Positions 1 through 27,386 of a stretch of DNA of 64,000 nucleotides are shown piece by piece. Within the stretch, counting starts at the first letter, position 1; the number at the start of each line of letters is the position of its first letter. Source of the stretch: Chrysemys picta bellii (lineage: Eukaryota); NCBI RefSeq assembly GCF_011386835.1, contig NC_088800.1, positions 86,552,001 through 86,616,000 on the forward strand, read 5' to 3'. The notes under the pieces were generated by a model. The model had not been told where the DNA came from and did no database searches. It saw only the letters and a list, made by a program, of their open reading frames with translations. The position numbers were made by a program, and so were the translations under genes.

Positions 1-21
1 TCCAGCACCACGCTGCCTCTC
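1..21 (-). CDS. Uncharacterised CUB-mucin-SEA protein, exon 6 (partial; SEA GSVV motif), continues beyond the window
   Basis: Acceptor ctcctgccccAG at 23-22; phase 2 gives (R)RGSVVL(E/D), the hallmark SEA motif, in frame with exon 5. Confidence 0.75.
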
Positions 22-329
22 CTGGGGCAGGAGCCAGAGAGACGGGTCAGAGCCAAGCCTCGGGAGCAGCCGGTCCCTAGCCGAGCAAGGGGGGGGCTGC
101 ACTGCCTCCCAGCTACCCCTGCTCCTCCACCAGCTGCAGGATCAGAGTCTGACCGGGGGGGGGGGGTGCAGGGGACGCCACGGGCTCTGACCCAAAGTCA
201 CAACAGTGTGACGGCAACACAGGACAAGCCGAAGCCCGAGCTGTGCACTTCCCTCTCCCCACCCTTGCGGGGGTTGCTGCCCGGACCCCTGCTCACGGAC
301 AGGAGCTGGGCTGCCGGGCACGCTCCTAC

Positions 330-388
330 CTGATCCGCGTCACTTCCAGGCGCTGGAATCCCGGCACAGCCGCGAAGAGGGGCGCCAC
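330..388 (-). CDS. Uncharacterised CUB-mucin-SEA protein, exon 5 (SEA domain, middle)
   Basis: Acceptor tttccgtgcacAG, donor AG|GTAGGA; 59 nt, phase 0-2; VAPLFAAVPGFQRLEVTRIR. Confidence 0.8.
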
Positions 389-589
389 CTGTGCACGGAA
401 ACAGGGAGGAGGTGCTTTGTGACGAGATAATTGGCCCCAGCTGCAGGGGACCCCGGTGTCTGAGCCCACAGCCTCCTATGGCGATGGTCACTGGGCAGCG
501 TGCTCCCTGCCCTGCCGCACTACCGCCATTAACCGCCAGGTCAGCGCCCATGCGACAGCCCCGCCCGCCCCAGCGCCCCCCGGACTCAC

Positions 590-702
590 CGTCTCATTGA
601 AACGCTGCACCAGCCTGCGATGCGCATGCGACGCGGGAATCTGGAAGGCGCTAACGAATTCCATCTCCAGCGCGAGTTCACAGGGCACGCGGAGAAGGGT
701 CG
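590..702 (-). CDS. Uncharacterised CUB-mucin-SEA protein, exon 4 (SEA domain, first part)
   Basis: Acceptor gtctcacAG, donor ACG|GTGAGT; 113 nt, phase 1-0; ATLLRVPCELALEMEFVSAFQIPASHAHRRLVQRFNET resembles SEA beta1/helix 1 (F...L.dP.S..y..L). Confidence 0.8.
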
Positions 703-1401
703 CTGTGAGACGAGACACCATCGGGGAAACGGTTACTGCTCCGTGCTCAGCCCACGCCCCGGCCAGCCCTGCATAGGAGCAGCGCCCCGGTTCAGGCTGG
801 CACCAAACACCGAGCTTGGGACAACGGGGAGGGAAGACGTGGGGAAGCGATGGAGAGCGCGGCGCAGGCGCCCGGGCATGGAGCCAGGACGCACAGCGAG
901 TCAGCAGAGCTGTGCCAGGGCTGCACTCACCCCAAAGGCCTCGTGAGCTCCAGACCCCTATTTGCTGCAAGAGGGGCTGTCCCAGCTGGACCCTGAGGGA
1001 TCCCCGTGGACAGCCGGAGTGTGCCCTCGGCATGGCTCAGCACCACTGGGAGCAAACACCCGTGCCCTGCTCTGGGGTCGCCTCACACGGCAGAACCACA
1101 TCCCCGAGTGGGCACCATGGCACGATTGCAGCGGGGGCCTGAGCAGCATGGCACGGGGGGAGCTCCCAGCAGAGGGCTGACATGGTGTCAGGGGCACTGG
1201 CCTGACTGGCCCAGGGCCCCACACTGGCTGTGCCTGGGCCAGAGAACCCGCTACCCCATTCATCCAGCTTTCCCAGTATGCTGCATTTGGACTGCACCAG
1301 CTGCACCCCTGACTGCACGCGACACCCCGTCCCTCTCCCCCGCGGGACGTCCCTGCCCAGACAGCAGCGCAGAAATCCAGGGGAGGCTCTGCCCGACTGA
1401 C

Positions 1402-4032
1402 CTTTGAGAAGAGGGGGCTGGTCTTCCACAACGAACACGCTCTGTGCCCTGCCACGGGCACCCTTGGTGGTGACAGGCGGCGGCTGCCCATCGGTCATCG
1501 CTGCCCTGAGCCGCGTGCTGGCGAAGGAGACATTCATCCTGGCACTGCTCACGGGATCCGTAACCTCTGCACCCCATGCCCTTGGGGTGGCTGCCAGCGG
1601 GGGCCAGGGACTCCTGCTGCCAGCTGGGGACCCAGCGCTCTCAGAGGTTAGTAGCAGCTCTGGGATGGGGGGCGTGGGGCTGAACAGGGCCCCGGTGCTG
1701 CTGCTCGGAAAGCTCCCCCCAGCCCCGCTCGGGGGTGTTGCATCAGTGGCTTGGCTGGAATTCCCCGGTTCAGACCCAGCCTGCGCAGCCCAGGCTGGGG
1801 GGGCCGTTGCCCGCTGGCCCAGCCTCTCGGTCCCTCCCCTCCAGCTTGCAGATGCCCACGAGGACGTTGCCACTGTGGCATTAGTGGTCGCCGTGTCCCA
1901 CGATGGAGACGGGGTGGTGGCCAAGCTGAGCTCTGCGAGTCCCAGGGCAGCAGACCCCGAAACATCCTTCTCTAAGGGGAATGGGGAACTCAGCCCAGCC
2001 CTGGGGGGGTCAAGGGGCGCTGTCGGGCTGAGCGCTGTGGAACCTCTCTGCAGAGTGGCTGCCGGTGTCTCCACTCCAGCAGGCTGGCTGGCTGGCGGAG
2101 GCTGAAAGCCCAGAGGAGTGATGGCTCGCATGGTGCCAGAGCCATAGGGCACGGCTTCCCCACTGGAGGCTCCCGGGAACACTCCCTCCTGAGACGTCAC
2201 TGCCCCGACTGGGGCAGGAGCCAGGGAGAGCTGCTTGGCCCCGGGAGTGTGGGCGACAGGAGGCTGGGAGGATGTGCCCACAGACACAGCCGTACCGGGC
2301 ACGGCTGGGACCGTGCTGCGGGGCTCCCCTGTGCCAGGCACTCGAGACCTCTCAGCAGGAGTTTCGGGGAGCCAGGCGAGAGTCCGGAAGTCACTCGATA
2401 GCCGCTCCAGGGCTGGGGCTGCTGTTGACGAGCTGGGCTCTGGGGCGCGCTCACTGAGACCTCCGTTCTCCTGGCCAGGAGCTGTGGGGTGAGAGACATC
2501 GGCCCCCGTGCTGAGCTGCTCAGCTGGCGCTGGGGGCTGGGCCGAGCCAGGGGATGGGGCAGGTGCTGTGAGGTGGCCCAATGGCCTTGGGGTCCCAGCA
2601 TAGGCACTTGGCGTCCTGTCTGGGGAAGCCCCGGGGAGTGACTCGGCCCAGGACGCTGCCCGAAGGTCCCCCTCTGTGCGCGCCTCACTGGAGAGAGACA
2701 AGTCCATGTTTTCTGGGACTCCATCGACACCTCTGCGCCCTGGGGACTCCTCAGAGCCAGCCTCCACCAGCGTATGGCCCAGGCCCTCCCCAGGCCTGGG
2801 GCTTCCCAGGGGCACCATGCGATGGGTGCTGGAATGGAGTCCTGGAGCAGAGCCAGCTGTTGTGGCGAGCGGCTCTGTCAGGCCGCTGTCTGGGGTGCGC
2901 ACTGGGGTCCCGCTGGTCTCTGGGGCTGGCTTAGCTTTGCCCCCCGGCCGCCAGGTCAGACTCTCCCGGCCGTCTGGCCGCAGAGCAGGTGTCTGGCTGG
3001 TTTCCAGAGAGTCGCCCGGTGTGGAGGCTGCAGCGTGCATGGTGAGCTCCGTCTGTCCTTGCAGCAGGGTGCCAGAGCCCTCCGTGGGGCTCCGCAGCCT
3101 GGCTCCTAGGCCCAGGTCAGTGAAGTCCAACTCCGCAGTAACGGCAGCTTCCCTGTGTGCCGTCCCCAGCCCCCGCATCCCTCCTCCAAAGTGGGCCCCA
3201 TTGTCCCCTGTGCTTGCCCCAGGAGCAGGGCTGGCCACGGGCGCGGAGGTCACTGGCGTCTGTGAGCCCGCAGCACTGCCCCGGCTGGTCTCCGCCCTGG
3301 CTTTACTCAGGGCGAGAGCAACATCCGGCGTTTCCATGCTCCACGGCTCCGGGTCCGAGGGCCCTGTCGTGAGCGCGCTCTCTCCACTGGGGTACACTGG
3401 CTCCGTTACTGCGGAGGTGCTGGAAGGTGCCTGGTCCCATGAAGCCGTCTCGCGGGCGGCAGAGCCAGGAAACACCGTGGGTGACACTATATCGGAGCTG
3501 CTGCCCCCCAGGGAAGTGAGATCTTTTGCCCTCAGGTTTCCCAGAGGGACTGTCCCAGGGAGAGGCACCGACGTGGGATTTGCTGCCTTGAACTGTGACG
3601 CTGCAGAGAACCAGGGGCTGCCGGTGCTTCCAGCCGGCGTCCCCTTTCCTGCAGCAGACGGGCGCATACGCACTCCCGGGTCGCGGGCTTTGTCCCCGTG
3701 CTCAGCAGCTGCTGTAGTGGCCGGTGGCTCCACACGCTCAGCGGTGGCTCCCTCCTGAGCCAGGGGCCCGTTCCTCCGCCTGCCCAGCCACGCCCCTCGG
3801 GGCACGGGGGCAGCGTTACTCAGCGCCTCTCCGGGGCTCTCTGCAGTGCCGGCAGGCCAGGCCGCAGGGCTCTGGTGGGGAGCAAGGCTAGGGCGAGTGC
3901 CCGGGGCCGCGGTGCTGGGGCTGCGGAGACGCTCGGCAGCTCCAGATAACACAGCCCCCCTCAGCTTCACCGTGGCCTCTCGTGACGCCACCTGCCCAAC
4001 ACCTTCCCGCAGAGACTCCAGGGCATCCACAC
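1402..4032 (-). CDS. Uncharacterised CUB-mucin-SEA protein, exon 3 (877-codon Ser/Thr/Pro/Ala-rich mucin-like stalk)
   Basis: Acceptor ctctccactcAG at 4034-4033, donor AAAG|GTCAGT at 1401; 2631 nt open, phase 1-1; lies within ORF 1037..4030; low complexity, non-repetitive, ends VFVVEDQPPLLK. Confidence 0.8.
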
Positions 4033-7000
4033 CTGAGTGGAGAGAGGCAACGACGGGGAGACAGTTGAGGCAGAGCTATGAGCCCAAGGGGGACTGAAAT
4101 GCTTTTACTAGCCCCAGGCTTGGAGTCAGGACTCCTGGGTTCTCAGCCTGCCCCCGGCCTGAGAGTGACTCGCTGCGACACCTGGGGCAAGGCAATTCCC
4201 CTCTCTGTAAGGTGGGGACTCAGGCCTGGCCCCACCTCCCGGGGCACACGGGATGAGTCGCTGGGGAAGGTCTGCAGAGCGCAGCTTCCACGGGCTGGAA
4301 ATGTTCCATACTCCGCTCGGCCACACGGCCCCTGAGTGCAGCGAGGGGCACAGAGCAGGGCAGGCCGGGGAGCCGGGAAGGTCTGAGCTGCGAACGCTGA
4401 GTCAGGCTATGCCAGTGCTGCGTTCCCCATCTCCCAGCGGGGCTGAGTCCAGAGAGAGCAGAACCCAGCGATGCCCCATATACCCAGGAGGGAGCTGGAT
4501 CTCACCATGGCCATACAGCCCTACAGCTCTCTGGGCCTCAGCTCCGGGATAGGGGCGAGGAACAGGAGAAAACCCAGCCCCAGCCCAGGGGCCTCTGCAC
4601 ACTCTGCCTGGGCCCCGGTCAGGAGACGAACCCGGCCGAGAGGTGGGAAATGCACATGGAAAGGCCGGACCAGCCTTTCGGGCTGGCTGACTGACACGAC
4701 TAGCATGAGGTAGGGTGGGGTGACTGGAGGGAGCATCCAACCCCCTCCCAGGGAGAGCGGGACCATCTCCCCCAGCTCCAGGGGTGAGAATAAGGTTCCC
4801 TAGAATCAGAACCCGCCTGGCTCCCTGCGACTTCCCCCCCGTCCCATCACCTAGCGCCTAGGCAGAGCCTTTACCTGTCCGGCAGCGTTCCCCCGTTGAG
4901 TTCCCAGGGCAGAGACAGGTCTGTGCCGATCCCACCACGGAGCAGCAAAGGGCCAGCCGAGCACACCAATCCACAACCACTGGGAGGAGAGAGAGAGCGG
5001 GCACAGCTCATACCCTGGGTCCCCTCCCGCGAGACAGCGCAGAGAGCTCTGCACCCAGCTGCATGTGTAACAGCCCAGGATGCGCCGGAGGCAGGCCAGG
5101 TAACACACACCAGCCCGTCAGAGGCAGTGCTGGCCGACGTGCCCCACATGATGGCTCCCCAGCGCGGTGTCTCGGCCTGCCAGGCTCTGAGGGGCACTCC
5201 CCCAAGCAGGGCTGGCCAGGATGTGGGCCATGCAAGCGCTCAAGTGCCTTCCTTTTAATAACCAAACAAGCAGGCCACGATGGGGCCTGGGACACCAGAG
5301 TGACAAGGGGGACTCACACACTCACCTCCCCGACCGAGACCCGACAAGCTCCCGATGTCGAAACGCTGACGGGCATGGGACGCGGGACGGGCGCTGCCTC
5401 TCTGGCTGAGACAGACAAAACCCAACCCGCGTGTATTGTTCACACGCCGCAGAGCGCGCTGCGGTATTTGCCACATGGAGAGCGCTGCATAAAGGCCTCG
5501 TCTCCCAAGCCTCAAAAAGTACTCGCATTGGCCAATTATTAACAAGCCCTCCCCTGCCAAAGCCCAAATCTCCAAGAGAACAAAGCCAAGCCAAGCTGGG
5601 TGTCCCCACCTACCCCCAGCCCAGAGCAGCCGCATTGCTATGGCGATGGGTCTGGGGTGCGGTCTGGAGGATGATATAAGCACTAGTGGTCCTGGCAAGG
5701 AGACACGTTCGCTGTGGCCGGGAGCAGACTCTGGCCAAGCGCCTCTCAGCACCGGAAGGAACAAGGGGCATGACCGAGGAAAGGCCCGAGTGCACCCTGC
5801 CTCGTGACCCAGCTGGGGGGGCGGGGGGGCAGCTTTGACTAGGGACTGCAACAGGAATCCAGAGCCAGGCAGCGCTAGTGGGGAGGGCGATGCAGCTCCC
5901 CACACTGAAATCATGCTGCAGCAGGAGAGACCTGGGTGGCAACATGCTCTGGATGCAATAATGCTCAGTGCAGCCGTTCCCAAGCTGGGGGTCGCACCCC
6001 AAAACGAGGCTGCTGGGCCATTCAAATGTTTCCATTTTCCTCTCAAGCAATCCAAGCGCTTTCAAGTGCCGCCCCCTCATCCTGGCCAATGGGAAGCAAT
6101 TCCCGAATTCGCACCGCCCCAGCGCCAGCTCATTAGCCTTTGCCAGTATCTTGGGTCACCTGTCTTCTGTTGGGCACAAGCAACACGAGTGTTGGTCTGG
6201 CTTCACTGGCGCACTCCCGTCACCCCACGGGGGTAAAACCAGACACCGGCACTGGTGCTGGCAGGACTGGGGCGCTGGTTTGTTCTACCTGCAAGGCTTT
6301 CCTAATTCAAGTTCTGCCCGGGGCTGTGACAGATTCCAGCTCAAAGGAGGTGACGATTGTGCAGTCTGAGCCAAGCATTGGCAGTGAGCACACTATCAGC
6401 ATTAGATAAATACAGAAGAATATCGTTGTACAATGGCCAGAATAGCCCCCTGGTCTCTCTCTGTTTTCCTAACTACTTCATTTCTGCAAACCCAAGACCC
6501 CTCCCCCGGCTCTCACCACCCCAGCAGCTCAGGGCGTTTCTTTGCCCAAAAACCAATCGAGCCCTTTTTCAATGTGCAAAAAGTCCTTTTTCTGTCGCTC
6601 CTTTGCTTTATGCAACCAGTCACTTGGGAATTTAACTCTTTGCAGCATCTGGTTTCATAGAAAGCCATTTCCTGTGAAAGGAAAACCTGAGGCTTGGTTC
6701 AAAATCCAGCTGGAACTCACCAAAACTACCATGAATAAATAACAGAAACCTCTGAACCCAAACTCCTGCGTTACCTGAATGTAGGTCACATGGTGGGGAT
6801 AGCCTCACTGACACAGAACACTCCCATTTATCCAAATAAACTCCATGTCCCCCATTTCATTCAGATAACGAGCTAACGCGCCCATGTAACACACACACAA
6901 ATGATACAATCGCACCATACAAAAGATGGGGCCTAGATCACCTGATGAGTGCAGGCTATACGCCTATTCGCTCACAGGGCATCACGGGAAGCATGTCTGT

Positions 7001-7978
7001 GACAGCATTTTGCACAGCCCATGTGCATAGCTCAAGCCAAAGCAGACACACTGATTGACATTTACTGCAATGAAAGTCAGCGTCCGTATTTCCCAAACAC
7101 ACCAAATAAAAGCAGGGACTTTCGGCACGAGTCTGCAACAATTTTTCTCAGAAACAACAGGAATCAGACACTCTCCCTGGGGACAGATTACAGGAAATTT
7201 TCTCTCAGGGCAAATAATCTCTCCCTGGGCATATAAGTGCCTTTTGCAGCATTTCTTGCCATTTCCTCTGAAGCATGTGGTACTGGCCACTGCCAGAAGC
7301 AAGATACCAGGATAGGTGGAGTGCGGGTCTATGCTATTATTATTTAGCCTGTGAAAGGACAGAGCTGAAATCTAACATGAAACCCCCAGGCTACAATTTA
7401 AAAACAGCAGAGAATGTTCTTTTTAAGTCAATTCCTTCTCCCCATGCACACAGTCTAGCAGACTGCATGCAGCACAGGCTTCACTATAGGTCAGGCTTTG
7501 TCTACACAAAGAAAGTTGCACCAGTTTAAGTCACACTGGTTTGTAAATGGTTTTAGTTAAACCAGTCCATATCCCTCTGGGCGTTCCCTTATTGCTGTTT
7601 AAGGGTGACTTGTGCTGGTTAGTTTAAACCGAAGCCTAAACAGAGAGAAACCTGATTTAAACCGGAATAAGTGTCCACATGGCCTTTGGCACTGGTTTAC
7701 CTAAGTCAGCTTTAAAATCACACCCAGCTAAACCAGTGCAGCGTTCTGCATTCACCTCCCTCTTGTCCATAATCACAAAGCACCTGCCTCCCCACTAGCA
7801 CCACACCCCCACAGTGACATTCACTCTTGCCACTAACCCCGTTTTACACCCTTGCTGTAGCCGGTTTGCTCCTCAGGGCAGGGACTGGCATTGCGGTGCC
7901 TTGCACATGCTCGGCCTGGGTGCAGTAGAAAGGTCGGGCCAAGTGGAAACGGCTCCAGAGTCTCTGAATGGTTCTTAC

Positions 7979-8314
7979 CCCAGTAAGTGAAAGTGAGACT
8001 GGAATCCAGGCTCCCTCTGATCACGGTTCTGCCCTGTCCCTTCAGAAGAAAGCTGTGGGCAATGTCCACGGGCCCCTCCCTGCCGGCCCCTTCCCCTTCA
8101 AAGCGCACACTGAGGTTGGGATGAGCAGCCGCCTCCGGGGCTTTGATTTCCAGGCGTACTTCCTCGGAGGGCAGCGCTGCTATCACCCAGGTGCAGGTTC
8201 TGGTGGGTGCCGGAGGGCCCTTGGCTGCTGGTAAGTGGATGGTCCCATTAGCTGCTCTGGTCACGTCTATGACGCCTCCACAGCTCTCACGGTCCTCCAA
8301 AGAGCCGGCACCCC
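7979..8314 (-). CDS. Uncharacterised CUB-mucin-SEA protein, exon 2 (CUB-like domain)
   Basis: Acceptor ttttcgcttctAG, donor G|GTAAGA; 336 nt, symmetric phase 1-1; translation SCGGVIDV..NGTIHL..RTCTWVIAA...VRLEI fits the CUB pattern CGG..G.I...C.W.I....V.L (only the first Cys pair is present). Confidence 0.75.
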
Positions 8315-8350
8315 CTAGAAGCGAAAATCAAGTCTTGGTCAAAGGCTTCT

Positions 8351-8749
8351 GGCTCCCGGGGGGCACCACCCATGGGTGCCAGCCGCCCCCTCGCTGCGGG
8401 AGCATCCCCCGGACCAGGCTCCCGGGGGGGCACCACCCATGGGTGCCAGCCGCCCCCTCGCTGCAGGAGCATCCCCCGGACCAGGCTCCCGGGGGGGCAC
8501 CACCCATGGGTGCCAGCCGCCCCCTCGCTGCAGGAGCATCCCCCGGACCAGGCTCCCGGGGGGCACCACCCATGGGTGCCAGCCGCCCCCTCGCTGCGGG
8601 AGCATCCCCCGGACCAGGCTCCCGGGGGGGCACCACCCATGGGTGCCAGCCACCCCCTCGCTGCAGGAGCATCCCCCGGACCAGGCTCCCAGAGGGCACC
8701 ACCCATGGGTGCCAGCCACCCCCTCGCTGCGGGAGCATCCCCCGGACCA
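8351..8749. repeat. Minisatellite, 6 copies of a 66-67 bp unit in intron 1 of the CUB-mucin-SEA gene
   Basis: Units start at 8351, 8417, 8484, 8551, 8617 and 8684; unit GGCTCCCG(n)CACCACCCATGGGTGCCAGCCGCCCCCTCGCTGCRGGAGCATCCCCCGGACCA. Confidence 0.95.
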
Positions 8750-9080
8750 AGCCGCCCTGCAGAGGCGGGGCCGGGCCGGGCCCCGAGCTGAGCCCCCCGC
8801 AGCCCTGCGAGCCCCACGCCCCGGGCCGAGCAGCAGCCCGGCCGGGGGGGCGAGCGACGGTCCCCGGAGCCGGCCCGGCTCTCACCCGCCGCGCCCAGCA
8901 GCGCCAGGAGCGGGAGGAGGCTGCCCATGCTGCCCGCGGGCGGAGCGCTCGGCGCCGGCTGCCGGGAGCGCGGAGGCGGCCGCTGCCTGGAGCCGGCGGC
9001 AGGAAACCCCCCGCCCTGGCCCTGGCCCTGGCCCCCCGCCGCGGCGGCACCGGGCACGGAACCGCGGACACAGCGCAGCC
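8750..9080 (-). promoter_or_regulatory. CpG island / probable promoter and exon 1 of the CUB-mucin-SEA gene
   Basis: Very high GC and CpG density around ATG 8928. Confidence 0.6.
8886..8928 (-). CDS. Uncharacterised CUB-mucin-SEA protein, coding exon 1 (signal peptide MGSLLPLLALLGAA-G)
   Basis: ATG at 8928 inside a CpG island; Leu-rich hydrophobic N-terminus; donor G|GTGAG at 8885; 43 nt, ending in phase 1, which matches the next exon. Confidence 0.8.
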
Positions 9081-9470
9081 CCCCCGGTGCACCCCAAACC
9101 CCGCCCCCAGGCCCCACAAACCCCGCACTGCCCCGCCCCCAAGCCCCGCCCCGGGGCACCCCAAACCCCGCCCCCAGGCCCCCAGACCCTCACTGCCCCG
9201 CCCCCCAGACCCGCCCCGGGGCACCCCAAACCCAGACCCCAGACCCCAGACCCGCACTGCCCCGCCCCCCAGACCCGCCCCGGGGCACCCCAAACCCAGA
9301 CCCCAGACCCGCACTGCCCCGCCCCGGGGCACCCCAAACCCCGCCCCCAGACCCGCACTGCCCCGCCCCCCAGACCCGCCCCGGGGCACCCCAAACCCCG
9401 CCCCCCAGACCCGCCCCGGTGCACCCCAAACCTCGCCCCCAGGCCCCACAAACCCCGCACTGTCCCGCCC
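9081..9470. repeat. C-rich composite minisatellite upstream of the CUB-mucin-SEA gene
   Basis: 7 copies of the core GCACCCCAAACC with variable CCCCAGACCC/CGCACTGCCCCG modules; near-identical ~58 bp units at both ends. Confidence 0.9.
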
Positions 9471-10890
9471 CTCCCCAACCCCCCCACAGCCCCTCCGAAC
9501 TCCCTTCCATAAACAGCCCCACCCCAATGCACCCCTAAGCCCCCCATCCACAATCCCCTCAAATGCACCCCCCACTGCCCCAGAATGAATCTCACCACAC
9601 ACACCACAACACACACATTCTACAGAACACGTACGGTGCCATCCTCAACCAGGCAGAGCCACACAACACACTAGGCAAAGAGACCACTGCCCATTAGACA
9701 GACACTCCACAACCCAAACAAATACCATGCGAGGGAACCACACCCCTAGCCCATAAAAACCAGGCTTTTGCACTGTGCAAAAACACACAAACACAGGCAA
9801 GCCGCATACACGTTGTGCAAACGTCCCCCCACAGAAATCACACGGTGTGGGTCAAGGTCTCTGCCACTCTGTAGAAACGCCTAGATACAAAACCCCGTTA
9901 GATGGCCCCAATACAGGCAAAGAGCAGACTCCAAAGGCAGGTTCAGATGCACAGAAATGGCAAATGCAGCCATTTGAAAATCATAAATCAGGCTCCCAAC
10001 ATCATGATTTGAAATGTAAGTGTGGAGATTTTTATTTGCCTTCTAGTGTGCGGCATTAGGGTGTGTTCAGGTCACAGGTCACATTTTTCAAGATGTTATT
10101 TACAATCCAAAGGACTAGAAACTTACCTGTTCAAAAAGGAGATAGTCACTTGATTCTGGGAGCTACACACACTGTCCACAGCAGAAAACCCTCTTCAATG
10201 CAACACGAGACACACACTAGCAATCTAGTATCTTGGTGGGGAGCTTAGCATTTACCTCACATTCTGCTACAGCAAAGGCCTCTCCCTAAAGAACTAATGC
10301 CAACAGGAACAGACATTAGGTTTTGCAAACGGAAGCTTCAACTAACATGGAACAACTCAGGGGTTTGACAGCGGGCTGTGAACTCTTCCACCTACAGGTG
10401 TTGCCAATCCAAAAGTGGACCAGGGTCCAGGAGACTGAAAATTGCTATTGTCTGATGGCTGTTCGGTGGGGATCTCAGTGCAGCACCAAGCGTGCACATC
10501 ACAATTAGCACCCAGAGCCTGCTGGCAGTCTCAGCTGTGACGGTGGTAGACGTTTCATGCCACTGGTAGGGTAGGCTTTGGCTCTGTTCAGAATTGCACT
10601 AGTTCAACTCCAAATCTGTTTAAAATCCAATTGTATGAAACTGGTGCAAAACCCTGTGTGGGCACTGAGTTGAGTTAAATTGCTATACACCAACGTTTAA
10701 ATCAAATTTAAAGTGTCCACACAAGGTTTTGTTTCAGTTTAATTCAATCACTTTAAAAATCACCCCTTTAGTTAAGGTGGTGAAACCAACTACAGACAAG
10801 GTTGTCTGCTCTCCCCTGGAATGTAGGCATCACTCTACCAAGTCGCCCCTGGGTCGAGCTTCCAGTGCCCAACACTGGCTAGCACTAGAT

Positions 10891-11085
10891 CAGGGGTTCT
10901 CAAACTGGGGGTCAGGACCCCTCAGGGGGTCGCAAGGTTATCTGGGGGGTTGCGAGCTGTCAGCCTGCACCCCAAAGCCCACTTTGCCGCCAGCATTTAT
11001 AATGGTGTTAAATATATAAAGAAGCGTTTTTAATTTATTAGGGGGGTCGCACTCAGAGGCTTGCTATATGAAAGGGGTCACCAGT
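10891..11085 (+). mobile_element. hAT-type non-autonomous DNA transposon (MITE), right end missing
   Basis: Left TIR CAGGGGTTCTCAAAC; body similar to the copies at 13168 and 55329. Confidence 0.75.
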
Positions 11086-14551: not shown

Positions 14552-15138
14552 CTGTTAAAAAAGCCACACAGATTTGGTGTTTCAGAGCTCAAAAGTTACC
14601 TTGTATAATAAAACGTGCAAGAAAAGGGACCTGACAAGGACACATGACCAGCATGGAACAGCACTGCCAAAGGAATCTGGAGAGTCCGTGGCAAGGCTTA
14701 GCTCTGGGGAGATTGCCATTCTCCAATCACGGCACAGTTCAAGCAGCAGGAGCAGCTGTGCATGCTTCCTCCACGCTGCCCTGCCGTGCTCCTCAGCCCT
14801 GCCGTGGGGAGAGAGGGGGGCTTAGGCAGCATTCAGTCCTTGGCACTCTGGTGGGACTGCAGTTTGTGCTGGTATTTTCCCCTGATGTATACAGCTGGGA
14901 ACTGGGCTGAGGCAACAAGCTCATTTCACCATGACAGCAGACTTGCCGTCTGCCACCAAAATCTGGGCTAGATCCCATCTCAATGCCTTGCCTATGTCAT
15001 AGCGCTGACTACATTATACAGTATAGGAAGAAGGTATTTCTCATCTCCGCTGACTCCAGGGTGATTTTACACTGCCTGGCCATTACGGCTACTTACATAA
15101 ACGTAAGTTTCTACTTACTCCACTTCAAAGAAATGTCT

Positions 15139-15303
<165 letters not shown>

Positions 15304-15502
15304 TCAGACGCCTGTGCCTTGGCTCTGTGGGCAACCCACGGGCAGGGGTCGCTGTTCAGCAGTGCAGGCAGATTTGGCACCTCTTATTACTAAAGCTGTG
15401 TTTCCAAGCCTGCTGTGCCGTCCCCAGCAGCAGAACATTAGGCAGAACTAGCAGTTCCTGCAGATTGCGAAGCCTCACTAACAGAGTCAGCACCCTTCCA
15501 AG

Positions 15503-15727
15503 AAGCAACAGAGAGTCCTGTGGCACCTTTAAGGCTAACGGATGTATTGGAGCATAAGCTTTCGTGGGTGAATGTCCACTTCAGACGCAAGACCTCCGTC
15601 TGATGAAGTGGGCATTCACCCACGAAAGCTTATGCTCCAATACATCCGTTAGTCTTAAAGGTGCCACAGGACTCTCTGTTGCTTTTTACAGATCCAGACT
15701 AACACAGCTACCCCTCTGATACTTGAT
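15503..15727. mobile_element. Penelope-like retroelement end with inverted duplication and hammerhead core, in NDUFAB1 intron 3
   Basis: ~85-bp inverted arms (15503-15587 / 15597-15684); 11-bp TSD ACCCTTCCAAG at 15492-15502 and 15728-15738; same family as 19938-20108. The Penelope assignment is inferred from the hammerhead type. Confidence 0.75.
15597..15634 (+). ncRNA. Minimal type I hammerhead ribozyme motif (3-bp stem I)
   Basis: CGU-CUGAUGA-A-GUGGG/CAUUCA/CCCAC-GAA-AGCU-U^AUG. Confidence 0.6.
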
Positions 15728-16789
15728 ACCCTTCCAAGCACAGTTCAAGCTTCTATTGGACTCCCAGAGCTCTGAAACCAACTCTGATGTGCAACAGCTG
15801 TGAGCTGGCAAGGCAGTGGGCTAGTTACATGCAAGGGAGAACCCAAAGCATCACAGTTTGTTTCACAGTCTTCTATCAAGTGTCATTATAGCAAGTAGCC
15901 ATAAAGTTCACCAGGTTAGGGCCCGCTGGGGCTTGAAGCAGTAGAACTGGGCGCTACAACATTTTCTAGAAAATTCTGGCATTTCTATTTCTAAGTCCTG
16001 CTAGCTGCAAGTTAATCCCACCCCCAAATGTAAACAAGTGCAGTGATTAAATATATCTGGGCAATGTGCAAGGCAGAATGCCTCCAATTAAAGTGTAGAT
16101 GTTCTACTACCCTTTATTTTTTACACTATTGGGATTTATATGCAGTGAATATAAATGCCATATTTGGCCTCATATGGCACAATTTTTTGTTAAATTATGT
16201 CTATATTTCAGCATTTTGCTTTTTATCTGAAGCAATGAAAAGGACTCCGAGATATGAAGTACAAAGGAGTCTGGAATACAATAAAATGAAGGAAACAAAA
16301 GGTGGTTTTAGCAGGGCCAGATGAAGAGATTAAAGAATTGTTAGAAGCTAAGGTTGGAGAAGTCTAATACAATTCTCACCTCCAGAGCACACAAGAGAAT
16401 GTGGATGTATTGGACAGCAGTCTTGTGTCTAGTGTGCTCATTTGCATTTCATTACCCTGAATGCTCTGTTGGCTCCTAGCCATGCTACACTACAGCTAAT
16501 TCCCTAGGAAGGTTTTGAGGCAGGGACTTGAAGATGCACCAAACTGAAGCTATGGAAACCTTAATTTCCACTTCAGACAGGAGGTGCAGAAGCCACAAGA
16601 ATAAAATAAATCCCTGAGAGTTAGAGATACTTACATTGCTCAGAGAGCAAAACAGCTTTCTTTAGGTTGTGGAAGTTAAGTCAACGTTCAATATTCATAT
16701 TGAGCTTATGGAAATAAAAGAACTAAGATTTTGTTTGCAGTAAGCACATTTCGGGGGTCAATCAAGACAACAGCAGATCTCTCTCTCTT

Positions 16790-17025
16790 AAGTACCTACA
16801 TGGCCCCATTACCAAAGCAGCTGAGCATCTCACAGTCCTTAGTATATTTATCCTCACACCACCACCAGGAGATACGGAAATATTAGCCACACTGTACAGA
16901 TTAGAACTGAGGCAGAGCTAAGCGACTTGCCAAGGTTACACAGAAGCTGGTGGTACAGCAGGTCTTGAAGCTAGTTCTCCCACGTCCTAGGCTAGCCCTC
17001 TAACCACTGGACAATCCTTCCTCTC
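16790..17025 (-). mobile_element. tRNA-derived CORE-type SINE
   Basis: Reverse complement begins ggagaggaaggattgtccagtggttag (A box), then a CORE-like gtaaccttggcaagtcgcttag...ctgcctcag segment; same family as 45636. Confidence 0.6.
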
Positions 17026-17066
17026 CATAGGGAAGGATAGGGAGAACAGACATCACATAAACTTCA

Positions 17067-17210
<144 letters not shown>

Positions 17211-17774
17211 CTAGGGTAGGAAAAGTTAGAATATCAGGATGTGCCCCCACTTGGAGTTTACAGCCTACCCAGTGGTTTTGGCCTTTACCGTCCCTCTGCC
17301 AAACATGTTTTTAACTGAAAAGATATGAGTTTCTCCACTATCTAGTCAATACATATCATTATCCACATAACTAAGCCTTCTCGAGACTTAAAAATAACAA
17401 ATGTCTGTAGTAAAAAAAAGTTAACATATGAAGGGGCAATTTGACTACTGAGCAGTCTCTTAACATCTTTCCTGAGATGAAAAACTGCTCCATTAACAGT
17501 AACTGTTCAGAGAAACAGAATTTCCTGTTTCCTGACTGCCCCTGGATGCTGACTTGGTTTATTAATCCAAAGGCCTTAACTTCCTGGACCTTGTCACCAC
17601 TCATCTGTTATAGCATATCAGTTTGTGTGTGTACATGCTATAGAATTACCCCCCATGCTGCAGAATTACAGACTGTATCCTTCTGCAAGGCACACACTGA
17701 CAGGTTTGGGTCTCCCTTCTTTTATGGTGGCCTGGAGGAGCAACTCCATTTGTTACCATAACTGTTTTCTTTCA

Positions 17775-17942
<168 letters not shown>

Positions 17943-18479
17943 CTACAAGAAAAGCACAGGAATTCCTTACAAAACCACCAGGACAATCTGCACATAAATA
18001 CATGTATGAACCGATCCTTCACAGAGTCACTCCGAATGAAGGGGCCTGCACAGCACTTACCCCAGTCTGACTCTGAGACAGGATTCTCTCTTTTACACCT
18101 TCCCTTTTGTATAGTGGACAAAACCCTCTCCAGGCAATCCCTGAAGGTGGCAGACAATGCATTCTCTGTGATAAGAGAACTCCATAATCAGCCAAGCCAC
18201 GCATAGGCAGCAGGCTCAATCCCACATAAGAGAAAGGGAAATAGCAGCATGTGCTAGCAAGCTCCTCTTCGACAGAGCCGCTGCTCCTGTCAGCCACAAA
18301 AGATGACAACCATGACATGGTGGCCTGCACATGGGAGGTAGGGATGGAGAAGCCATACCGCCCACCGCTGGAGAGTGGAGCAGGCTCGGCTCTCCCTCAG
18401 CGCAGCGGCCCAGGCCTGAGACCCAGCTGCAGAAATATCCTGTCTCCCAGGGTGGGCAGCCTCAGAGAACTGGGCTAGA

Positions 18480-19245
18480 AACGCGGCAGCTGGGAACGGG
18501 GGGATAATCCACCTTCACGCCAGCCATGGCGGGTACTGGCGGGTACTGGCGAGCCTGGCTTAGCCCCGAAGGGTTCGGGTTCAGGTCCCTGCTCTGACGG
18601 GCCAGCTCGACCCGTGGGAACTCCGGCGAGCCCCGCTCGAACCCCGCGCGGACACACCATGTTTATTCACGGGATCGGCAAACAAGGCCCGCAGATGTGC
18701 GGGGCTCTCCCGGCTGTACCGGCCTCTGGCTGGCAACCGCCTCGCCCGGGCCCGGGCCACACCGACCTGACCGGGCCGCGGAGCCCGGGGCCGGGCCCAG
18801 GGTCACCTCTGGCCGGGACAGGGCGGGGAGCTCCCCGCTTCCCCAGCCCCGCCCGCCGCTGGGCGGGTCCCTGGGGGAGGAGCGCGGCGGCGGGGCCCGG
18901 CCTCGGGGGGGCTCCCCCGGGCTCCCCCCGCCAGCCCCGAGCGCGGGCCGAGCCTCACCTGGGGGCCCGGCGCTGCGCGGGCGGGCGGCCGGCGGCTGCA
19001 GAGGGCGCTGAGCCCGGCGGGGCTGGGGCCGGCGCTACGGGCCGCGAGCGGGGTCAGCCGGGGCAGGAGGCGGCGGACACAGGCGGACAGGACACGGGCC
19101 GCCATGGCGTCCTGCTACCCAGCGTGCGCCGCGCGGGGCCGCACATATCCCGGCAAGCCCCGCGCGCGGAGGGAAGGGGAGGGCGTCGCAGCGAGCGGCC
19201 GGCAGCGCCCCCTGGCGGGCGGGCGGGGAAACTGCGCCGCGCACA
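18480..19245 (-). promoter_or_regulatory. CpG island over the NDUFAB1 promoter and exon 1
   Basis: High GC/CpG density around ATG 19105. Confidence 0.7.
18959..19105 (-). CDS. NDUFAB1: NDUFAB1 coding exon 1 (mitochondrial targeting peptide); full protein is the 148-aa mitochondrial acyl carrier protein
   Basis: MAARVLSACVRRLLPRL..., Arg-rich and acid-free presequence; strong Kozak GCCATGG; donor CAG|GTGAGG; 147+120+88+92 = 447 nt. Confidence 0.93.
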
Positions 19246-24467: not shown

Positions 24468-25133
24468 TAGGAGACAATTGTTAAGTGTTACCACGTTCTA
24501 AAGCCTCAATCTGCAAACACACAACTGTGTAACTTTTCTTATGCATATAACTGTTTGGAGGATTGGAGACAATGTCTTATTCTCCAGATTTAAGATCTTG
24601 GAAAGATCACCTAGCTCCATATGGCAATCTAATACTAAGTAAATGTACTTACATCTAGAGATAAGACTCTCAAACCATTTTAAGCATTTACAGTGTTAAT
24701 TTGCCTAAATTTTCCCAGAGGTTTTGCCTTTGGATTCAGAAATTACAGCTTCAGTTACAGAATCTCTCCTCCCACAAACATTTTGTGAAAGTAAATAGAG
24801 TGTGAAGTCTGCAAGGGAGCAATTCCCTGGCTTGAACACAGGGCTTTCTTACACAGAGCTCCCTGGTGCACCAGGACACAGGGAGCTCAGAGGTTAGCTC
24901 ACAGACATGTGCGGGAAGCAGACAGGAAATGGACAACACCCTCACTGTGATCTGTATATACAAAAGTTGAAGTGACTTATCACAACCTCACTATCATCAG
25001 CTAGCAAATGGCCCCTCACAGCTTGCCAGCTTTTTGGCTCTCCCACGGACTCCTTTTATCATTTAACGATTCCAGGTCTCTGCTTAAAAAAATAGTCTAA
25101 GAAATACATGTGCATTATTCCTGGGGTACTTGC

Positions 25134-25282
25134 CTTCCGCTGTGTCCAGGGGGGAGGGAGAAGAACATTACCCCAGTACTTCTGGCTGTTTTGGGATTGA
25201 ACACTCTCATCCGGAATGCAGGGTTTCCACAGGACTCATTCTCTTTGGCATGTGGGTGACTTAAAACAACAAACAGGAGGCC
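25134..25282 (-). CDS. PALB2: PALB2 exon 12 (GC donor)
   Basis: GLLFVVLSHPHAKENE...FNPKTARSTGVMFFSLPPGHSG(R); 149 nt; donor AG|GCAAGT. Confidence 0.92.
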
Positions 25283-26355
25283 CTGATTTACAAAGGAAAA
25301 ATAGGTCACTAGAGTGAATGTTAAGAGAAAAACAATAACAAGCTGTTTTTTTCCAATCAATCATTGGTAAATTCTCTCCTGTAATCAGAACCCCATGTCA
25401 GCTGATGCTGTAAGCAGTAAGAATTTACCACTCCTGGTATTTATCAAATTAAATACAAACAAATGCAGGAGCTGCTGGGAGGCTGGTTGATTAGGATTTA
25501 TTTGGTGCAGTGGAATGACAGGTCAGTGACACAATGAATTTATGCACTTCTTTTTCAGCTCAGAATAGCTAACATCAAATCAGGATTAACTCACACAGAA
25601 AATAAGTTTGTTGGTCTCAATCTAGTCATTTATTCACATAACAAAACTACTGCACAATTAGACATGACTGGGAGCTTCTGCTTAAGGCAAGGCCAGGCTG
25701 AGAGTCAGATCTTGAAGAATCCCCCACTGGTCTGGCTCAAGCCAGTACTATTAATCCACACATTCATAAGCACTAAATTTACACACCCACAGGATTAAAG
25801 GTTCACTGAGATGAACCCCAGTCAAGAATCCTAAGAATGCAAGTGGGCAAAGGAATCATGGCAGAGGTGCTAATGAATGGGAAAATCCATCAGAATTAGA
25901 ACTAAGACTTTGTACACAAATTTGTGTGTTTAGATCAAGTTCTGAGTGTTTGGGGTATGTGTAATTATTAAATAATTGTAGTGTTACAAGGATGAGGCTG
26001 TGCCATCAGCGTGGCTGGAGCTAGCCATTAGTAAATTGGGAAAGATTAACTGTGCAATCACATCAATCAATGATAGTTCTAAAACACACACACAAAATGT
26101 TTTGGCAGCTGTTTTTGAACCTACTGTGGTGTGTTACTCTTTTGCTTACCAATATATCTGTGAAAAGAACAAGAAATTCAGAAAAGTGATTCAACCTCTT
26201 CCTCACAATCTAACTCCGTTTTCCTTTAATTTTCTTAGTGGACCTGAACACAACAGGTCCTTAAATCCAGGAGCCTCTTTTAGACAACTGCACCTTTGAA
26301 CCCCAGTCACAGGCACTCCTGGCACAAATAGAATGACACCATCTCACATACATAC

Positions 26356-26443
26356 AGAGTCAGAATAGACGCGATGGCAGATTGAAGCAGGATAGGAATA
26401 ACCAAAGTGCATCTTTTTCAGAATCTGGCCAGTTTTCAAGTTC
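26356..26443 (-). CDS. PALB2: PALB2 exon 11
   Basis: (W)[29 protein letters not shown]; 88 nt; AG/GTATGT. Confidence 0.95.
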
Positions 26444-26901
26444 CTGCAGAAAATGGAAACAGATAATTTGACTGTTTTATAATCCTCTTATTTGTATTTA
26501 TTCTTTAGACTGCAGTAGCACCAGTGAGCAAGGCACTGTCCAAACAAATGACTACTCCAAAAAGGTGGTAGACAACGGGTGAGGGAAAGGGATGCAACAT
26601 ACAAGTGCCGTGAGCAGCGCTGGGATAGCAGCACGGCCCGTTAGCTATATGTTTATCTAGATTTATAAAAATAAATCAGAAAAAAAGTTCTGTTCCAGGC
26701 TCTAGGGCCCCTTGACAATGGATTTAAAATAATTAACAACTTAAGGACAAACCAGCAGCAAACTCCACCACATAGGATCTGTAACTAGCTAATACAGCCA
26801 AAATCACTATACATCCTCTCTTCCCTCTGTATCATCCCACAAGCAACAGTCCCTCCCCAAAAACCCTAGTGATATAGTGTAATCTCAGAGGAAGCACTTA
26901 C

Positions 26902-27018
26902 CAAACAACAAGGCTGTTCACTGCAGTTGTGCCAACCAAAGCGTCTCTAATCCCTTCTACCTCAGCAAAAGCCAGAATGGTTTCTTCTGGGGGCATCAAA
27001 GTCTGCCTCTCATTGCTT
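26902..27018 (-). CDS. PALB2: PALB2 exon 10
   Basis: [38 protein letters not shown](W); 117 nt. Confidence 0.95.
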
Positions 27019-27224
27019 CTGGGGAGAACATGAACATAAACAGTAGATGGGAAAAAACTCTCAGAATTCAATACACAAGAGAATCGTTCACACGCAGCAA
27101 TATTCCAGAAAGGACAGCATACGATCCCCTTGGCACCACAGATACCACTGCCCAGCCTTTGTGACATCTCCTGAGGGCTCTCCCATCCCCATACTGAAAA
27201 CACCACAAATATCAGACTGCTTAC

Positions 27225-27386
27225 CTTCCTGCCTCCGAAACTGAGATTATCTCGATTTGCTGGTCTTGAAGTGTCCCACTACTACTGACCAGCCTCCTGT
27301 TTGTCAGACCAAGAACAGCTTTTATGTTCCCGGTTTTCACTAGGGACTGCTTTAAGGAGCCGTCTTCAGAAGAACAAAGCAAGAGC
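27225..27386 (-). CDS. PALB2: PALB2 exon 9
   Basis: [47 protein letters not shown]; 162 nt. Confidence 0.95.

What the first reader, a model, noticed from the sequence alone, without database searches (positions are those of the whole stretch)
1..8928. Unrecognised secreted or membrane mucin with a CUB - mucin stalk - SEA architecture
Seen: six exons join in frame (43, 336, 2631, 113, 59, >=21 nt; at least 1067 aa). They encode a signal peptide, a symmetric phase 1-1 CUB-like exon, an 877-aa non-repetitive S/T/P/A stalk and a SEA domain. Known: CUB and SEA co-occur in type II serine proteases and ADGRG6, but not, to my knowledge, in this order around a giant mucin stalk. I recall no such gene next to human NDUFAB1. 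Inference: a lineage-restricted (possibly lost in mammals) tethered mucin or receptor whose distal CUB acts as a ligand-binding tip on a glycosylated rod.
Basis: partly seen in the sequence, partly recalled or inferred. Interest (0 to 1): 0.78.

Follow-up and report, generated by a model that had tools for sequence, protein, structure and literature searches.

The report
Turtle Vap gene: CUB-EGF-stalk-SEA protein
This is a real, expressed turtle gene for a single-pass membrane glycoprotein with a CUB-EGF head on a long disordered stalk and a SEA domain. It is not unrecognised, because it is the ortholog of the little-studied zebrafish gene vap, which is found across jawed vertebrates and appears to be missing only from marsupials and placentals.

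Summary
The exons are real. The window therefore holds 7 exons and at least 1102 codons.

Structure prediction supports the domain calls:
- **CUB:** Z about 9 to spermadhesin, MASP and neuropilin CUB domains.
- **SEA:** Z 10-11 to MUC16 and TMPRSS SEA domains, modelled on a bird ortholog, with G-S-V-V in the beta2-beta3 hairpin.

Full-length turtle models (about 1420 aa) continue beyond the window with an EGF, one transmembrane helix and a 180-aa cytoplasmic tail that is conserved from sharks to birds.

"Lineage-restricted and unrecognised" is not supported. Orthologs occur in sharks, ray-finned fish (named vap or si:ch211-14k19.8), coelacanth, lungfish, amphibians, squamates, birds and monotremes. 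The gene tree mirrors the species tree, and PALB2-NDUFAB1-gene synteny is shared with a cyprinid. No therian ortholog was found. The closest named paralog is IMPG2.

The stalk is non-repetitive, only 22% Ser+Thr, and evolves almost neutrally, so "mucin" is a loose label. The CUB/EGF head has been lost repeatedly.

Verdict: a new member of a known, barely studied family.

The parts
8886..8928 (-). Exon 1, coding part: ATG at 8928..8926 and a hydrophobic signal peptide. Ends in phase 1 with a GT donor at 8885..8884.
   Evidence: Sequence read. The loose end at 8315 in RNA contigs of X1 (205 nt) and X11 is the reverse complement of this exon. Same N-terminus as turtle models P0001 and P0004.
7979..8314 (-). 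Exon 2, 336 nt, phase 1-1: CUB domain with only the first disulfide pair retained.
   Evidence: AG/GT borders. RNA joint 4979|7979 in 4 runs. AlphaFold model pLDDT 73.6. Foldseek top hits are spermadhesin, neuropilin and MASP CUB domains, E 2e-5. VIA Z 9.0-7.2, with nearly all of the top 50 entries CUB domains. Pfam CUB only E=0.3. dN/dS 0.43 against Natator.
4875..4979 (-). Exon 3, 105 nt, phase 1-1: N-terminal EGF-like module with six Cys and a shortened C2-C3 loop in turtles.
   Evidence: Found by translating the intron. Borders read. Joints 4979|7979 and 4875|4032 appear in all four RNA runs. Present in turtle models. The homologous module in paddlefish and lungfish passes Pfam EGF at 28-30 bits. 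dN/dS 0.18.
1402..4032 (-). Exon 4, 2631 nt, phase 1-1: 877-codon Cys-free, non-repetitive Ala/Pro/Ser/Gly/Thr-rich disordered stalk.
   Evidence: Open frame, borders. Covered end to end by RNA contigs over the part laid, 2340-4030. 77-96% identical to other hard-shelled turtles' models and 51% to Pelodiscus. Composition and absence of repeats. dN/dS 0.82. The orthologous stalk is predicted disordered.
590..702 (-). Exon 5, 113 nt: start of the SEA domain (strand beta1 and helix alpha1).
   Evidence: AG/GT borders. Colinear with P0001 and P0004. Corresponds to residues about 393-430 of the confidently folded SEA model of P0016.
330..388 (-). Exon 6, 59 nt: SEA helix alpha1 end and strand beta2.
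   Evidence: AG/GT borders. Colinear with the turtle models.
1..21 (-). Start of exon 7: encodes R-G-S-V-V-L, the SEA autoproteolysis-type motif. The exon and five more coding exons lie beyond the left edge of the window.
   Evidence: Sequence. The motif sits in the beta2-beta3 hairpin of the ortholog model. It is conserved in tetrapods, coelacanth, sturgeons and sharks. The Natator gene has 12 coding exons. The X1 mRNA contig extends about 2 kb past the window edge.

Best explanation
Window 1-8928 (minus strand) holds the promoter-proximal seven exons of the turtle ortholog of Vap ('vascular associated protein'; teleost vap / si:ch211-14k19.8).

Shown:
- The gene is transcribed and spliced.
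- The predicted product is a type I single-pass membrane glycoprotein of about 1420 aa.
- The domain order is signal peptide, CUB, EGF-like, an 877-aa disordered A/P/S/G/T-rich stalk, SEA with a G-S-V-V motif, a Cys-rich/EGF module, a TM helix, and a roughly 180-aa cytoplasmic tail. The tail's motifs (SSYRRF, SLDNPAF, DSGKASD..SWP.EP.QWTPFP, SYCEGMELV..SWTA) are almost invariant from sharks to birds.

Inferred mechanism:
- The stalk, probably O-glycosylated, holds the CUB-EGF head far from the membrane as a binding module.
- The SEA domain self-cleaves at G|SVV in the ER. This would give two non-covalently held chains that can separate under force or be shed, as in MUC1.
- The invariant tail passes the signal inward, through NPxF-type adaptor binding and a DSGxxS phosphodegron-like site.
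- Because the head has been lost in several lineages while SEA-EGF-TM-tail never is, the conserved core function lies in the membrane-proximal module and tail.
- The zebrafish paper's title links the family to erythropoiesis and angiogenesis.
For: Gene structure and expression: exon borders. Spliced RNA contigs in four studies, one of them 5478 nt long.

Full-length models: turtle models of 1286-1435 aa, the closest 96% identical, show the rest of the protein.

Folds: CUB. SEA, EGF and TM at pLDDT 85-97, with the SEA matching MUC16, TMPRSS6 and 2e7v SEA domains at Z 10.1-11.4. Pfam SEA passes threshold in the paddlefish ortholog (32.1 bits).

Orthology: C-terminal hits at E 1e-97 to 1e-189 across gnathostomes, including proteins that sources name vap or Vascular associated protein. 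The maximum-likelihood tree of the C-terminal 400 aa mirrors the species tree with one teleost clade.

Synteny: PALB2, NDUFAB1, then this gene in the window, Natator, alligator, lizard, goose and a cyprinid, with a convergent TNRC6 gene downstream in Natator and a similarly placed ~1,930-1,960-residue convergent gene in alligator, lizard and goose that I did not identify.

Other: tail invariance. GSV[VIL] conservation. si:ch211-14k19.8 is listed in a blood-vasculature gene set (PMC11968557).
Against: - No cleavage, glycosylation, localisation or binding was tested.
- The Kawahara 2012 paper is not held, so only its title is known. The equation with 'vap' rests on database names.
- The G-S motif is lost in teleosts, gar, two soft-shelled-type turtles, quail and Pogona, so cleavage is not essential to the family.
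- The tail is predicted disordered, and its motifs are read from consensus knowledge only.
- The stalk has just 22% Ser+Thr, so dense mucin-type glycosylation is uncertain.
- The tissue of the RNA runs is unknown (coded runs).
- The TM and tail lie outside the window and are taken from orthologs.
Confidence: 0.85

Rival explanations
1. A classical barrier-type transmembrane mucin of the MUC3/12/13/17 kind. Its main role would be a dense O-glycan coat on epithelia, with the CUB domain and tail secondary.
For: Same SEA-EGF-TM order. The ESM Atlas places the C-terminal part nearest 'Mucin-12 family' clusters (score 0.94). Many automatic names say mucin-like.
Against: No tandem repeats, only 22% Ser+Thr and a single non-repetitive exon. 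No sequence-level match to solved MUC SEA chains. The cytoplasmic tail is far more conserved than the ectodomain. The only literature links are vascular or blood.
Confidence: 0.15
2. A membrane proteoglycan like its paralog IMPG2 (or CSPG5). The stalk would carry glycosaminoglycan chains and bind matrix, rather than acting as a mucin rod.
For: IMPG2 of a turtle and of a caecilian are the best named paralogs in the exhaustive profile search (E 4e-24 and 4e-26). Annotation pipelines often label the orthologs IMPG2 or CSPG5. The stalk has 9 Ser-Gly pairs, 4 of them near acidic residues.
Against: There are few Ser-Gly sites for 877 residues. There is no second SEA domain as I recall for IMPG2 (from memory, not tested). 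GAG attachment cannot be read from sequence.
Confidence: 0.2
3. The N-terminal fragment of an adhesion GPCR (ADGRG6-like CUB...SEA...GAIN-7TM) whose 7TM exons lie off the window.
For: The zebrafish Gpr126 ectodomain matches both the CUB model (Z 8.6) and the SEA model (Z 7.7).
Against: Full-length orthologs, including the 96%-identical turtle model, end in one TM helix and a short tail, with no GAIN or 7TM. The 5.5-kb mRNA contig is the right size for about 1420 aa.
Confidence: 0.01
4. A decaying or mis-predicted gene: open frames in GC-rich DNA that happen to join in frame.
For: The stalk evolves nearly neutrally (dN/dS 0.82). The region is about 67% GC with many spurious ORFs.
Against: Spliced transcripts in four studies. 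The frame is kept open over about 880 codons in nine turtle genera. The CUB and EGF exons are under purifying selection. Deep conservation of the remainder.
Confidence: 0.01

Closest known systems
Zebrafish Vap (vascular associated protein; vap / si:ch211-14k19.8), Kawahara, Endo & Dawid 2012
   Same: Same orthogroup: 44-52% identity over the C-terminal 380 aa. A single teleost clade in a tree that follows the species tree. PALB2-NDUFAB1-gene synteny in a cyprinid. CUB domain at the N-terminus in cyprinids. Same SEA-EGF-TM-tail order.
   Different: Teleosts have lost the G-S cleavage motif (SGPVLQ or SGHAVQ) and, where checked, the N-terminal EGF exon. The turtle keeps the fuller ancestral layout also seen in coelacanth, lungfish and sturgeons. 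I could not read the paper, so what it says about domains or function beyond its title is unknown to me.
IMPG2 (interphotoreceptor matrix proteoglycan 2)
   Same: Closest named vertebrate paralog in the exhaustive profile search. It shares the SEA-EGF-TM module. Many bird orthologs are auto-named IMPG2.
   Different: Only E about 1e-24 to 1e-26, against 1e-100 or better for orthologs. The match does not extend into the conserved tail (profile positions up to about 761 of 927). A separate IMPG2 gene exists in turtles.
SEA-module membrane mucins (MUC1, MUC3/12/17, MUC13, MUC16)
   Same: SEA fold with G-S-V-V in the beta2-beta3 hairpin. EGF next to the membrane, a single TM helix and a Ser/Thr/Pro-rich ectodomain.
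   Different: No tandem-repeat PTS array and lower Ser/Thr content. A CUB-EGF head at the tip. A long, highly conserved cytoplasmic tail with no Pfam match and no usable named-cluster hit in the ESM Atlas; I did not compare it directly with mucin tails.
Proteins combining CUB and SEA: matriptase/TMPRSS6-type type II proteases and ADGRG6
   Same: Both domain folds match these structures: 9nrc_A at CUB Z 9.0 and SEA Z 10.8, 6v55_A at CUB Z 8.6 and SEA Z 7.7.
   Different: Opposite membrane topology or a 7TM anchor. A protease or GAIN domain is present there and absent here. There is no long stalk between CUB and SEA in those proteins.

Membership tests
Vap orthogroup (teleost vap / si:ch211-14k19.8) | Strong full-module similarity of SEA-EGF-TM-tail to proteins that sources name vap | tested here: met
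   Astyanax 'Vascular associated protein' at E 3e-99, cyprinid si:ch211-14k19.8 at about 1e-97, Mustelus 'vap' at 6e-114. Gasterosteus 'vap' and Triplophysa 'Vascular associated protein'.
Vap orthogroup (teleost vap / si:ch211-14k19.8) | Gene tree congruent with the species tree (one-to-one orthology, not a paralog) | tested here: met
   43 sequences, 29 of 39 inner branches strongly supported. Sharks, ray-finned fish and lobe-finned lineages are placed as in the species tree.
Vap orthogroup (teleost vap / si:ch211-14k19.8) | Conserved genomic position | tested here: met
   PALB2, then NDUFAB1 (PP-binding), then this gene, in the window, Natator (45), alligator (69), Lacerta (70), goose (71) and the cyprinid Chanodichthys (59). 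Stickleback differs (58).
Vap orthogroup (teleost vap / si:ch211-14k19.8) | Identity with the protein actually studied by Kawahara et al. 2012, and vascular or erythroid expression | not testable with these tools
   The paper is not held. The link rests on database gene names. The tissue origin of the RNA runs is coded.
CUB domain | Pfam PF00431 above the gathering score | tested here: not met
   11.8 bits against a cut-off of 21.4 for the window exon. 16.0 bits for coelacanth.
CUB domain | Ten-strand beta-sandwich CUB fold | tested here: met
   Model pLDDT 73.6 with 10 strands. Foldseek 1spp/1sfp at E 2e-5. VIA Z 9.0-7.2, rmsd about 3 A over 88-100 of 111 residues, and nearly all of the top 50 entries are CUB domains.
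CUB domain | Two conserved disulfides (C1-C2, C3-C4) | tested here: inconclusive
   The first pair is invariant in all 38 sequences. The second pair is present in coelacanth, lungfish, sturgeons and a shark, but absent in turtles and teleosts.
SEA domain | Pfam PF01390 above the gathering score | tested here: inconclusive
   Turtle full-length models score 17-18 bits, below the 26.4 cut-off. The paddlefish ortholog scores 32.1 bits, above it. Precomputed PF01390 is on record for at least 12 orthologs. The window holds only the first roughly 60% of the domain, split over three exons.
SEA domain | beta-alpha-beta-beta-alpha-beta SEA fold | tested here: met
   Tested on bird ortholog P0016, not on the window sequence itself. 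pLDDT 85-97. The top six VIA hits are all SEA domains at Z 10.1-11.4, followed by a clear drop.
SEA domain | Autoproteolysis motif G|S-V-V-V at the beta2-beta3 turn, and actual cleavage | tested here: inconclusive
   The G-S-V-V-L motif is present at window 21..1 and lies in the hairpin of the model. It is conserved in most non-teleost lineages. Cleavage itself is not testable here.
Membrane mucins (MUC1/3/12/13/16/17) | Tandem-repeat, densely Ser/Thr/Pro-rich PTS domain | tested here: not met
   No repeated 6-mers and no tandem repeats in the exon. Ser+Thr 22%, Pro 13%.
Adhesion GPCR (ADGRG6-like) | GAIN domain and seven transmembrane helices | tested here: not met
   Full-length orthologs have one TM helix and no GAIN or 7TM hit.

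The most novel reading that the evidence does not exclude
Vap would be an ancient vertebrate surface receptor: a sister of IMPG2 with likely lamprey and hagfish relatives. Its ancestral form is CUB-EGF head, disordered stalk, self-cleaving SEA, EGF, TM and an ultra-conserved signalling tail. Turtles, coelacanth, lungfish and sturgeons would keep this full form. Other lineages shed the head exon by exon (both exons are phase 1-1), teleosts lost SEA cleavage, and therian mammals lost the whole gene after relaxation that is already visible in monotremes. If the SEA break acts as a force-sensitive release in blood-vessel or blood cells, this would be an unstudied mechanosensing or shedding receptor that mouse and human biology cannot reveal.
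Probability: 0.25. Interest if true: 0.55.

Novelty: new member of a known kind. Interest (0 to 1): 0.3.

Why it matters
For this window the result is mainly a correction.

The family is still poorly served:
- Annotation pipelines call its members mucin-19-like, collagen alpha-1(I)-like, NACA-like, SAP18 or IMPG2.
- I found one functional paper, from 2012.
- I found no description of the domain layout, of the shark-to-bird invariant cytoplasmic motifs, of the stepwise loss of the CUB/EGF head, or of the apparent loss in therians.

A consistent name and a domain map would improve vertebrate annotation. They would also flag a conserved surface receptor that cannot be studied in mouse or human.

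Tried and rejected
- Exon-wise Pfam scans gave nothing above threshold.
- A profile of 38 orthologs against PDB sequences gave no real hit.
- An ESM Atlas search of the tail alone gave nothing usable.
- Rfam on 1-10000 gave nothing.
- DNA for the closest model, P0001, was withheld. P0013 is not on record.
- The Kawahara 2012 paper is not held under its PMC id or PubMed id. Further literature searches for vap added nothing.
- Adhesion-GPCR and pseudogene readings were considered and rejected (see rivals).
- Alligator could not settle CUB loss in crocodilians, because a 1.6-kb assembly gap lies just upstream of its EGF exon.
- Six unnamed short fragments from the exhaustive search were checked as possible therian remnants. 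All are closest to birds, a teleost or a squamate.
- I laid reads only on 2340-8339. This kept within the 6000-letter limit and avoided the intron-1 minisatellite, so the three SEA-exon junctions have no direct RNA evidence here.
- The joined spliced protein was deliberately not built or searched.
Full report
**1. What is in the sequence**

The gene lies on the minus strand.

|---|---|---|---|
| 1 | 8928..8886 | 43 nt | ATG and signal peptide |
| 2 | 8314..7979 | 336 nt, phase 1-1 | CUB-like |
| 3 | 4032..1402 | 2631 nt, phase 1-1 | stalk |
| 4 | 702..590 | 113 nt | SEA |
| 5 | 388..330 | 59 nt | SEA |
| 6 | 21..<1 | at least 21 nt | SEA, reads R-G-S-V-V-L |

Exons were searched one by one by reference, and full-length database orthologs stood in for the whole protein.

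**2. A missed exon, and RNA evidence**

Full-length models from other turtles carry about 35 residues with six cysteines between the CUB exon and the stalk. The matching exon is in the window at 4979..4875. It is 105 nt, has AG/GT borders and is phase 1-1.

Contigs of four runs from four studies, all of one organism, were laid on 2340-8339:
- All four contain the joints 7979|4979 and 4875|4032, which are GT..AG on the minus strand.
- None joins the CUB exon straight to the stalk.
- Intron depth is near zero, so the runs are RNA.
- A loose end at 8315 is the reverse complement of exon 1.
- One contig is 5478 nt long and runs about 2 kb past the left edge of the window.

The window therefore holds seven exons (3308 nt, at least 1102 codons). 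The three 3' junctions were not covered by the reads call. They rest on colinearity with the turtle models.

**3. Identity of the protein**

A word search with the stalk exon found only turtle proteins of 860-1435 aa:
- The best is Malaclemys 'mucin-19-like' at 96%.
- The other hard-shelled turtles are at 77-83%, and the soft-shelled Pelodiscus is at 51%.
- The flatback sea turtle Natator is at 82%.

These models show the rest of the protein. After the SEA domain come a Cys-rich/EGF module, one TM helix and a tail of about 180 aa ending in SWTA.

The C-terminal 380 aa then retrieved 256 proteins:
- birds, alligator and squamates
- platypus and echidna
- salamanders and caecilians; a frog turned up in the platypus-query search
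- coelacanth and lungfish
- sturgeons, paddlefish and gar
- teleosts, sharks and a skate

Sources name some of them vap, 'Vascular associated protein' or si:ch211-14k19.8.

Three further lines support one orthogroup:
- A maximum-likelihood tree of the C-terminal 400 aa reproduces the vertebrate species tree, with a single teleost clade holding both names.
- Synteny is PALB2, then NDUFAB1, then this gene. This order holds in the window, Natator (45), alligator (69), Lacerta (70), goose (71) and a cyprinid (59).
- A convergent TNRC6 gene lies downstream in Natator (PF16608 at E 8e-27); alligator, Lacerta and goose have a convergent gene of ~1,930-1,960 residues in the same place, which I did not identify.

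[quoted passage not shown] I saw this only as a citation, because the paper itself is not held. si:ch211-14k19.8 appears in a blood-vasculature gene set (PMC11968557) and as iridophore-enriched (PMC3706446).

**4. Domains**

*CUB.* Pfam is sub-threshold (E 0.3). An AlphaFold model of exon 2 with 38 aligned orthologs (pLDDT 73.6, ten strands) gives these matches:

| Method | Matches | Scores |
|---|---|---|
| Foldseek | spermadhesins, neuropilin, MASP, PCPE-1 | E 2e-5, TM about 0.6 |
| VIA-align | nearly all of the top 50 entries are CUB domains | Z 9.0-7.2, rmsd about 3 A over 88-100 of 111 residues |

The first disulfide, the Trp after it and two Gly are invariant. The second disulfide survives only in coelacanth, lungfish, sturgeons and a shark.

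*N-terminal EGF.* This module passes Pfam in paddlefish and lungfish. Turtles have a four-residue deletion between C2 and C3.

*Stalk.*
- It has 876 full codons with no Cys and no repeated 6-mers.
- Composition is A 15%, P 13%, S 13%, G 11%, T 9.5%, with Ser+Thr at 22%.
- dN/dS against Natator is 0.82, compared with 0.43 for the CUB exon and 0.18 for the EGF exon.
- Its length and open frame are nevertheless kept in all turtles.
- The orthologous stalk is predicted disordered.

*SEA.* Turtle models reach only 17-18 bits in Pfam, while paddlefish reaches 32 bits, above the cut-off. A model of bird ortholog P0016 shows a beta-alpha-beta-beta-alpha-beta domain at pLDDT 85-97, with G-S-V-V in the beta2-beta3 hairpin. 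Its top six VIA matches are SEA domains of MUC16, TMPRSS6 and a mouse transmembrane protease. They score Z 10.1-11.4 and are followed by a clear drop (Foldseek).

The G-S-[VIL]-[VIL] motif is kept in tetrapods, coelacanth, sturgeons and sharks. It is lost in teleosts, gar, Pelodiscus, Carettochelys, quail and Pogona.

*Tail.* It is predicted disordered. Even so, SSYRRF, SLDNPAF, DSGKASD..SWP.EP.QWTPFP and SYCEGMELV..SWTA are invariant or nearly so from sharks to birds.

**5. Evolution of the head and of the gene**

Presence of the N-terminal head:

| Lineage | CUB exon | N-terminal EGF exon |
|---|---|---|
| Turtles, coelacanth, lungfish, sturgeons/paddlefish | present | present |
| Cyprinid (Chanodichthys locus) | present | not found |
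| Characins, eels | present in protein models | not checked at DNA level |
| Goose | absent (no assembly gap) | degenerate |
| Lacerta, stickleback | absent | absent |
| Platypus | absent | absent, within the 10 kb upstream that I had |
| Alligator | undecided (1.6-kb gap upstream) | present |

Both head exons are phase 1-1, so their loss keeps the reading frame.

Evidence on therian mammals:
- With the platypus C-terminus as query, the hits after echidna (88%) drop straight to turtles and birds (53%). There is no therian among 121 hits.
- An exhaustive HMMER profile search of 1.84 billion representatives gave 566 hits.
- All 150 listed hits are one of three things: sequences already named, sequences whose nearest named relative is non-therian, or more distant relatives that I then identified.
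- The platypus tail is itself degraded. NPAF has become NLAY, QWT is deleted and the CEGMELV block is changed. The monotreme stem is long in the tree (0.69).

Loss in therians is therefore well supported but not proven. Only the best 150 of 566 hits are listed, and no mammalian genomes could be searched.

The more distant relatives identified in that search were:
- IMPG2 of a turtle and of a caecilian, at E about 1e-24 to 1e-26
- homologs in lamprey (7e-72) and hagfish (3e-51)
- homologs in amphioxus, a starfish and a snail

**6. How it most likely works**

Shown:
- It is an expressed type I membrane protein with the domain order above.

Inferred from what is established for MUC1-type SEA modules and for CUB domains:
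- The stalk projects a CUB-EGF binding head.
- The SEA domain self-cleaves to give a non-covalent, force-separable heterodimer.
- The invariant tail carries the signal, through an NPxF-type adaptor motif and a DSGxxS degron-like motif.

The repeated loss of the head, set against the strict retention of SEA-EGF-TM-tail, places the core function near the membrane. Whether the stalk is mucin-like, proteoglycan-like (as in the paralog IMPG2) or a bare spacer cannot be told from sequence.

**7. Verdict**

- The architecture reading is right.
- 'Unrecognised' and 'lineage-restricted' are wrong.
- 'Lost in mammals' is right for therians only.

This is a new member of a known, very little-studied family, of modest interest.

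Noticed in passing
window 8351-8749: A 67-nt x 6 GC-rich minisatellite (96% matches) fills much of intron 1 of the gene. A multi-copy counterpart sits at the same place in Natator (L001 about 10400-11014).
   Followed up: partly
window 9082-9458: A block of overlapping GC-rich 44-65-nt tandem repeats lies immediately upstream of exon 1 and the likely transcription start. On the plus strand it reads as long Pro-rich ORFs that are almost certainly not genes.
   Followed up: no
window 8094: A 9-nt in-frame indel polymorphism adds Ser-Pro-Gly to a loop of the CUB domain. It is present in RNA contigs of runs X9 and X11 and in other turtles' models, and absent from X1, X2 and the window assembly.
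   Followed up: partly
window 7263-7293: A 31-nt stretch inside the CUB-EGF intron is shared with an 877-nt, well-covered RNA contig in three runs that otherwise does not match here. It is probably a fragment of a repeat or of another transcript.
   Followed up: no
window 4979 / 5326: A minor alternative joint, 4979|5326 (skips 346 nt, CT..AC), is seen in one low-depth contig of run X11 only. It may be a rare alternative 5' exon or splicing noise.
   Followed up: no
window 15000-19100 and about 24800-27400: NDUFAB1 exons (minus strand, about 15.1-19.1 kb) and PALB2 WD40 exons (about 24.8-27.4 kb) map by tblastx to the cyprinid and Natator loci. This confirms the tandem PALB2-NDUFAB1-vap order.
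   Followed up: partly
whole window (species identity): The stalk exon is 96% identical to the emydid terrapin Malaclemys but only 82% identical to the flatback sea turtle Natator, and DNA identity to Natator is about 88% throughout.
   Followed up: partly
L002 23019-27639 (platypus): The platypus copy has a degraded cytoplasmic tail: NPAF has become NLAY, the QWT of QWTPFP is deleted and the CEGMELV block is changed. The monotreme branch in the tree is long, which fits relaxed constraint before loss in therians.
   Followed up: partly
P0145: A tilapia (Oreochromis niloticus) ortholog sequence is also filed in nr under a ferret (Mustela putorius furo) label. This is probably a contaminated or mislabelled record, not a mammalian ortholog.
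   Followed up: no
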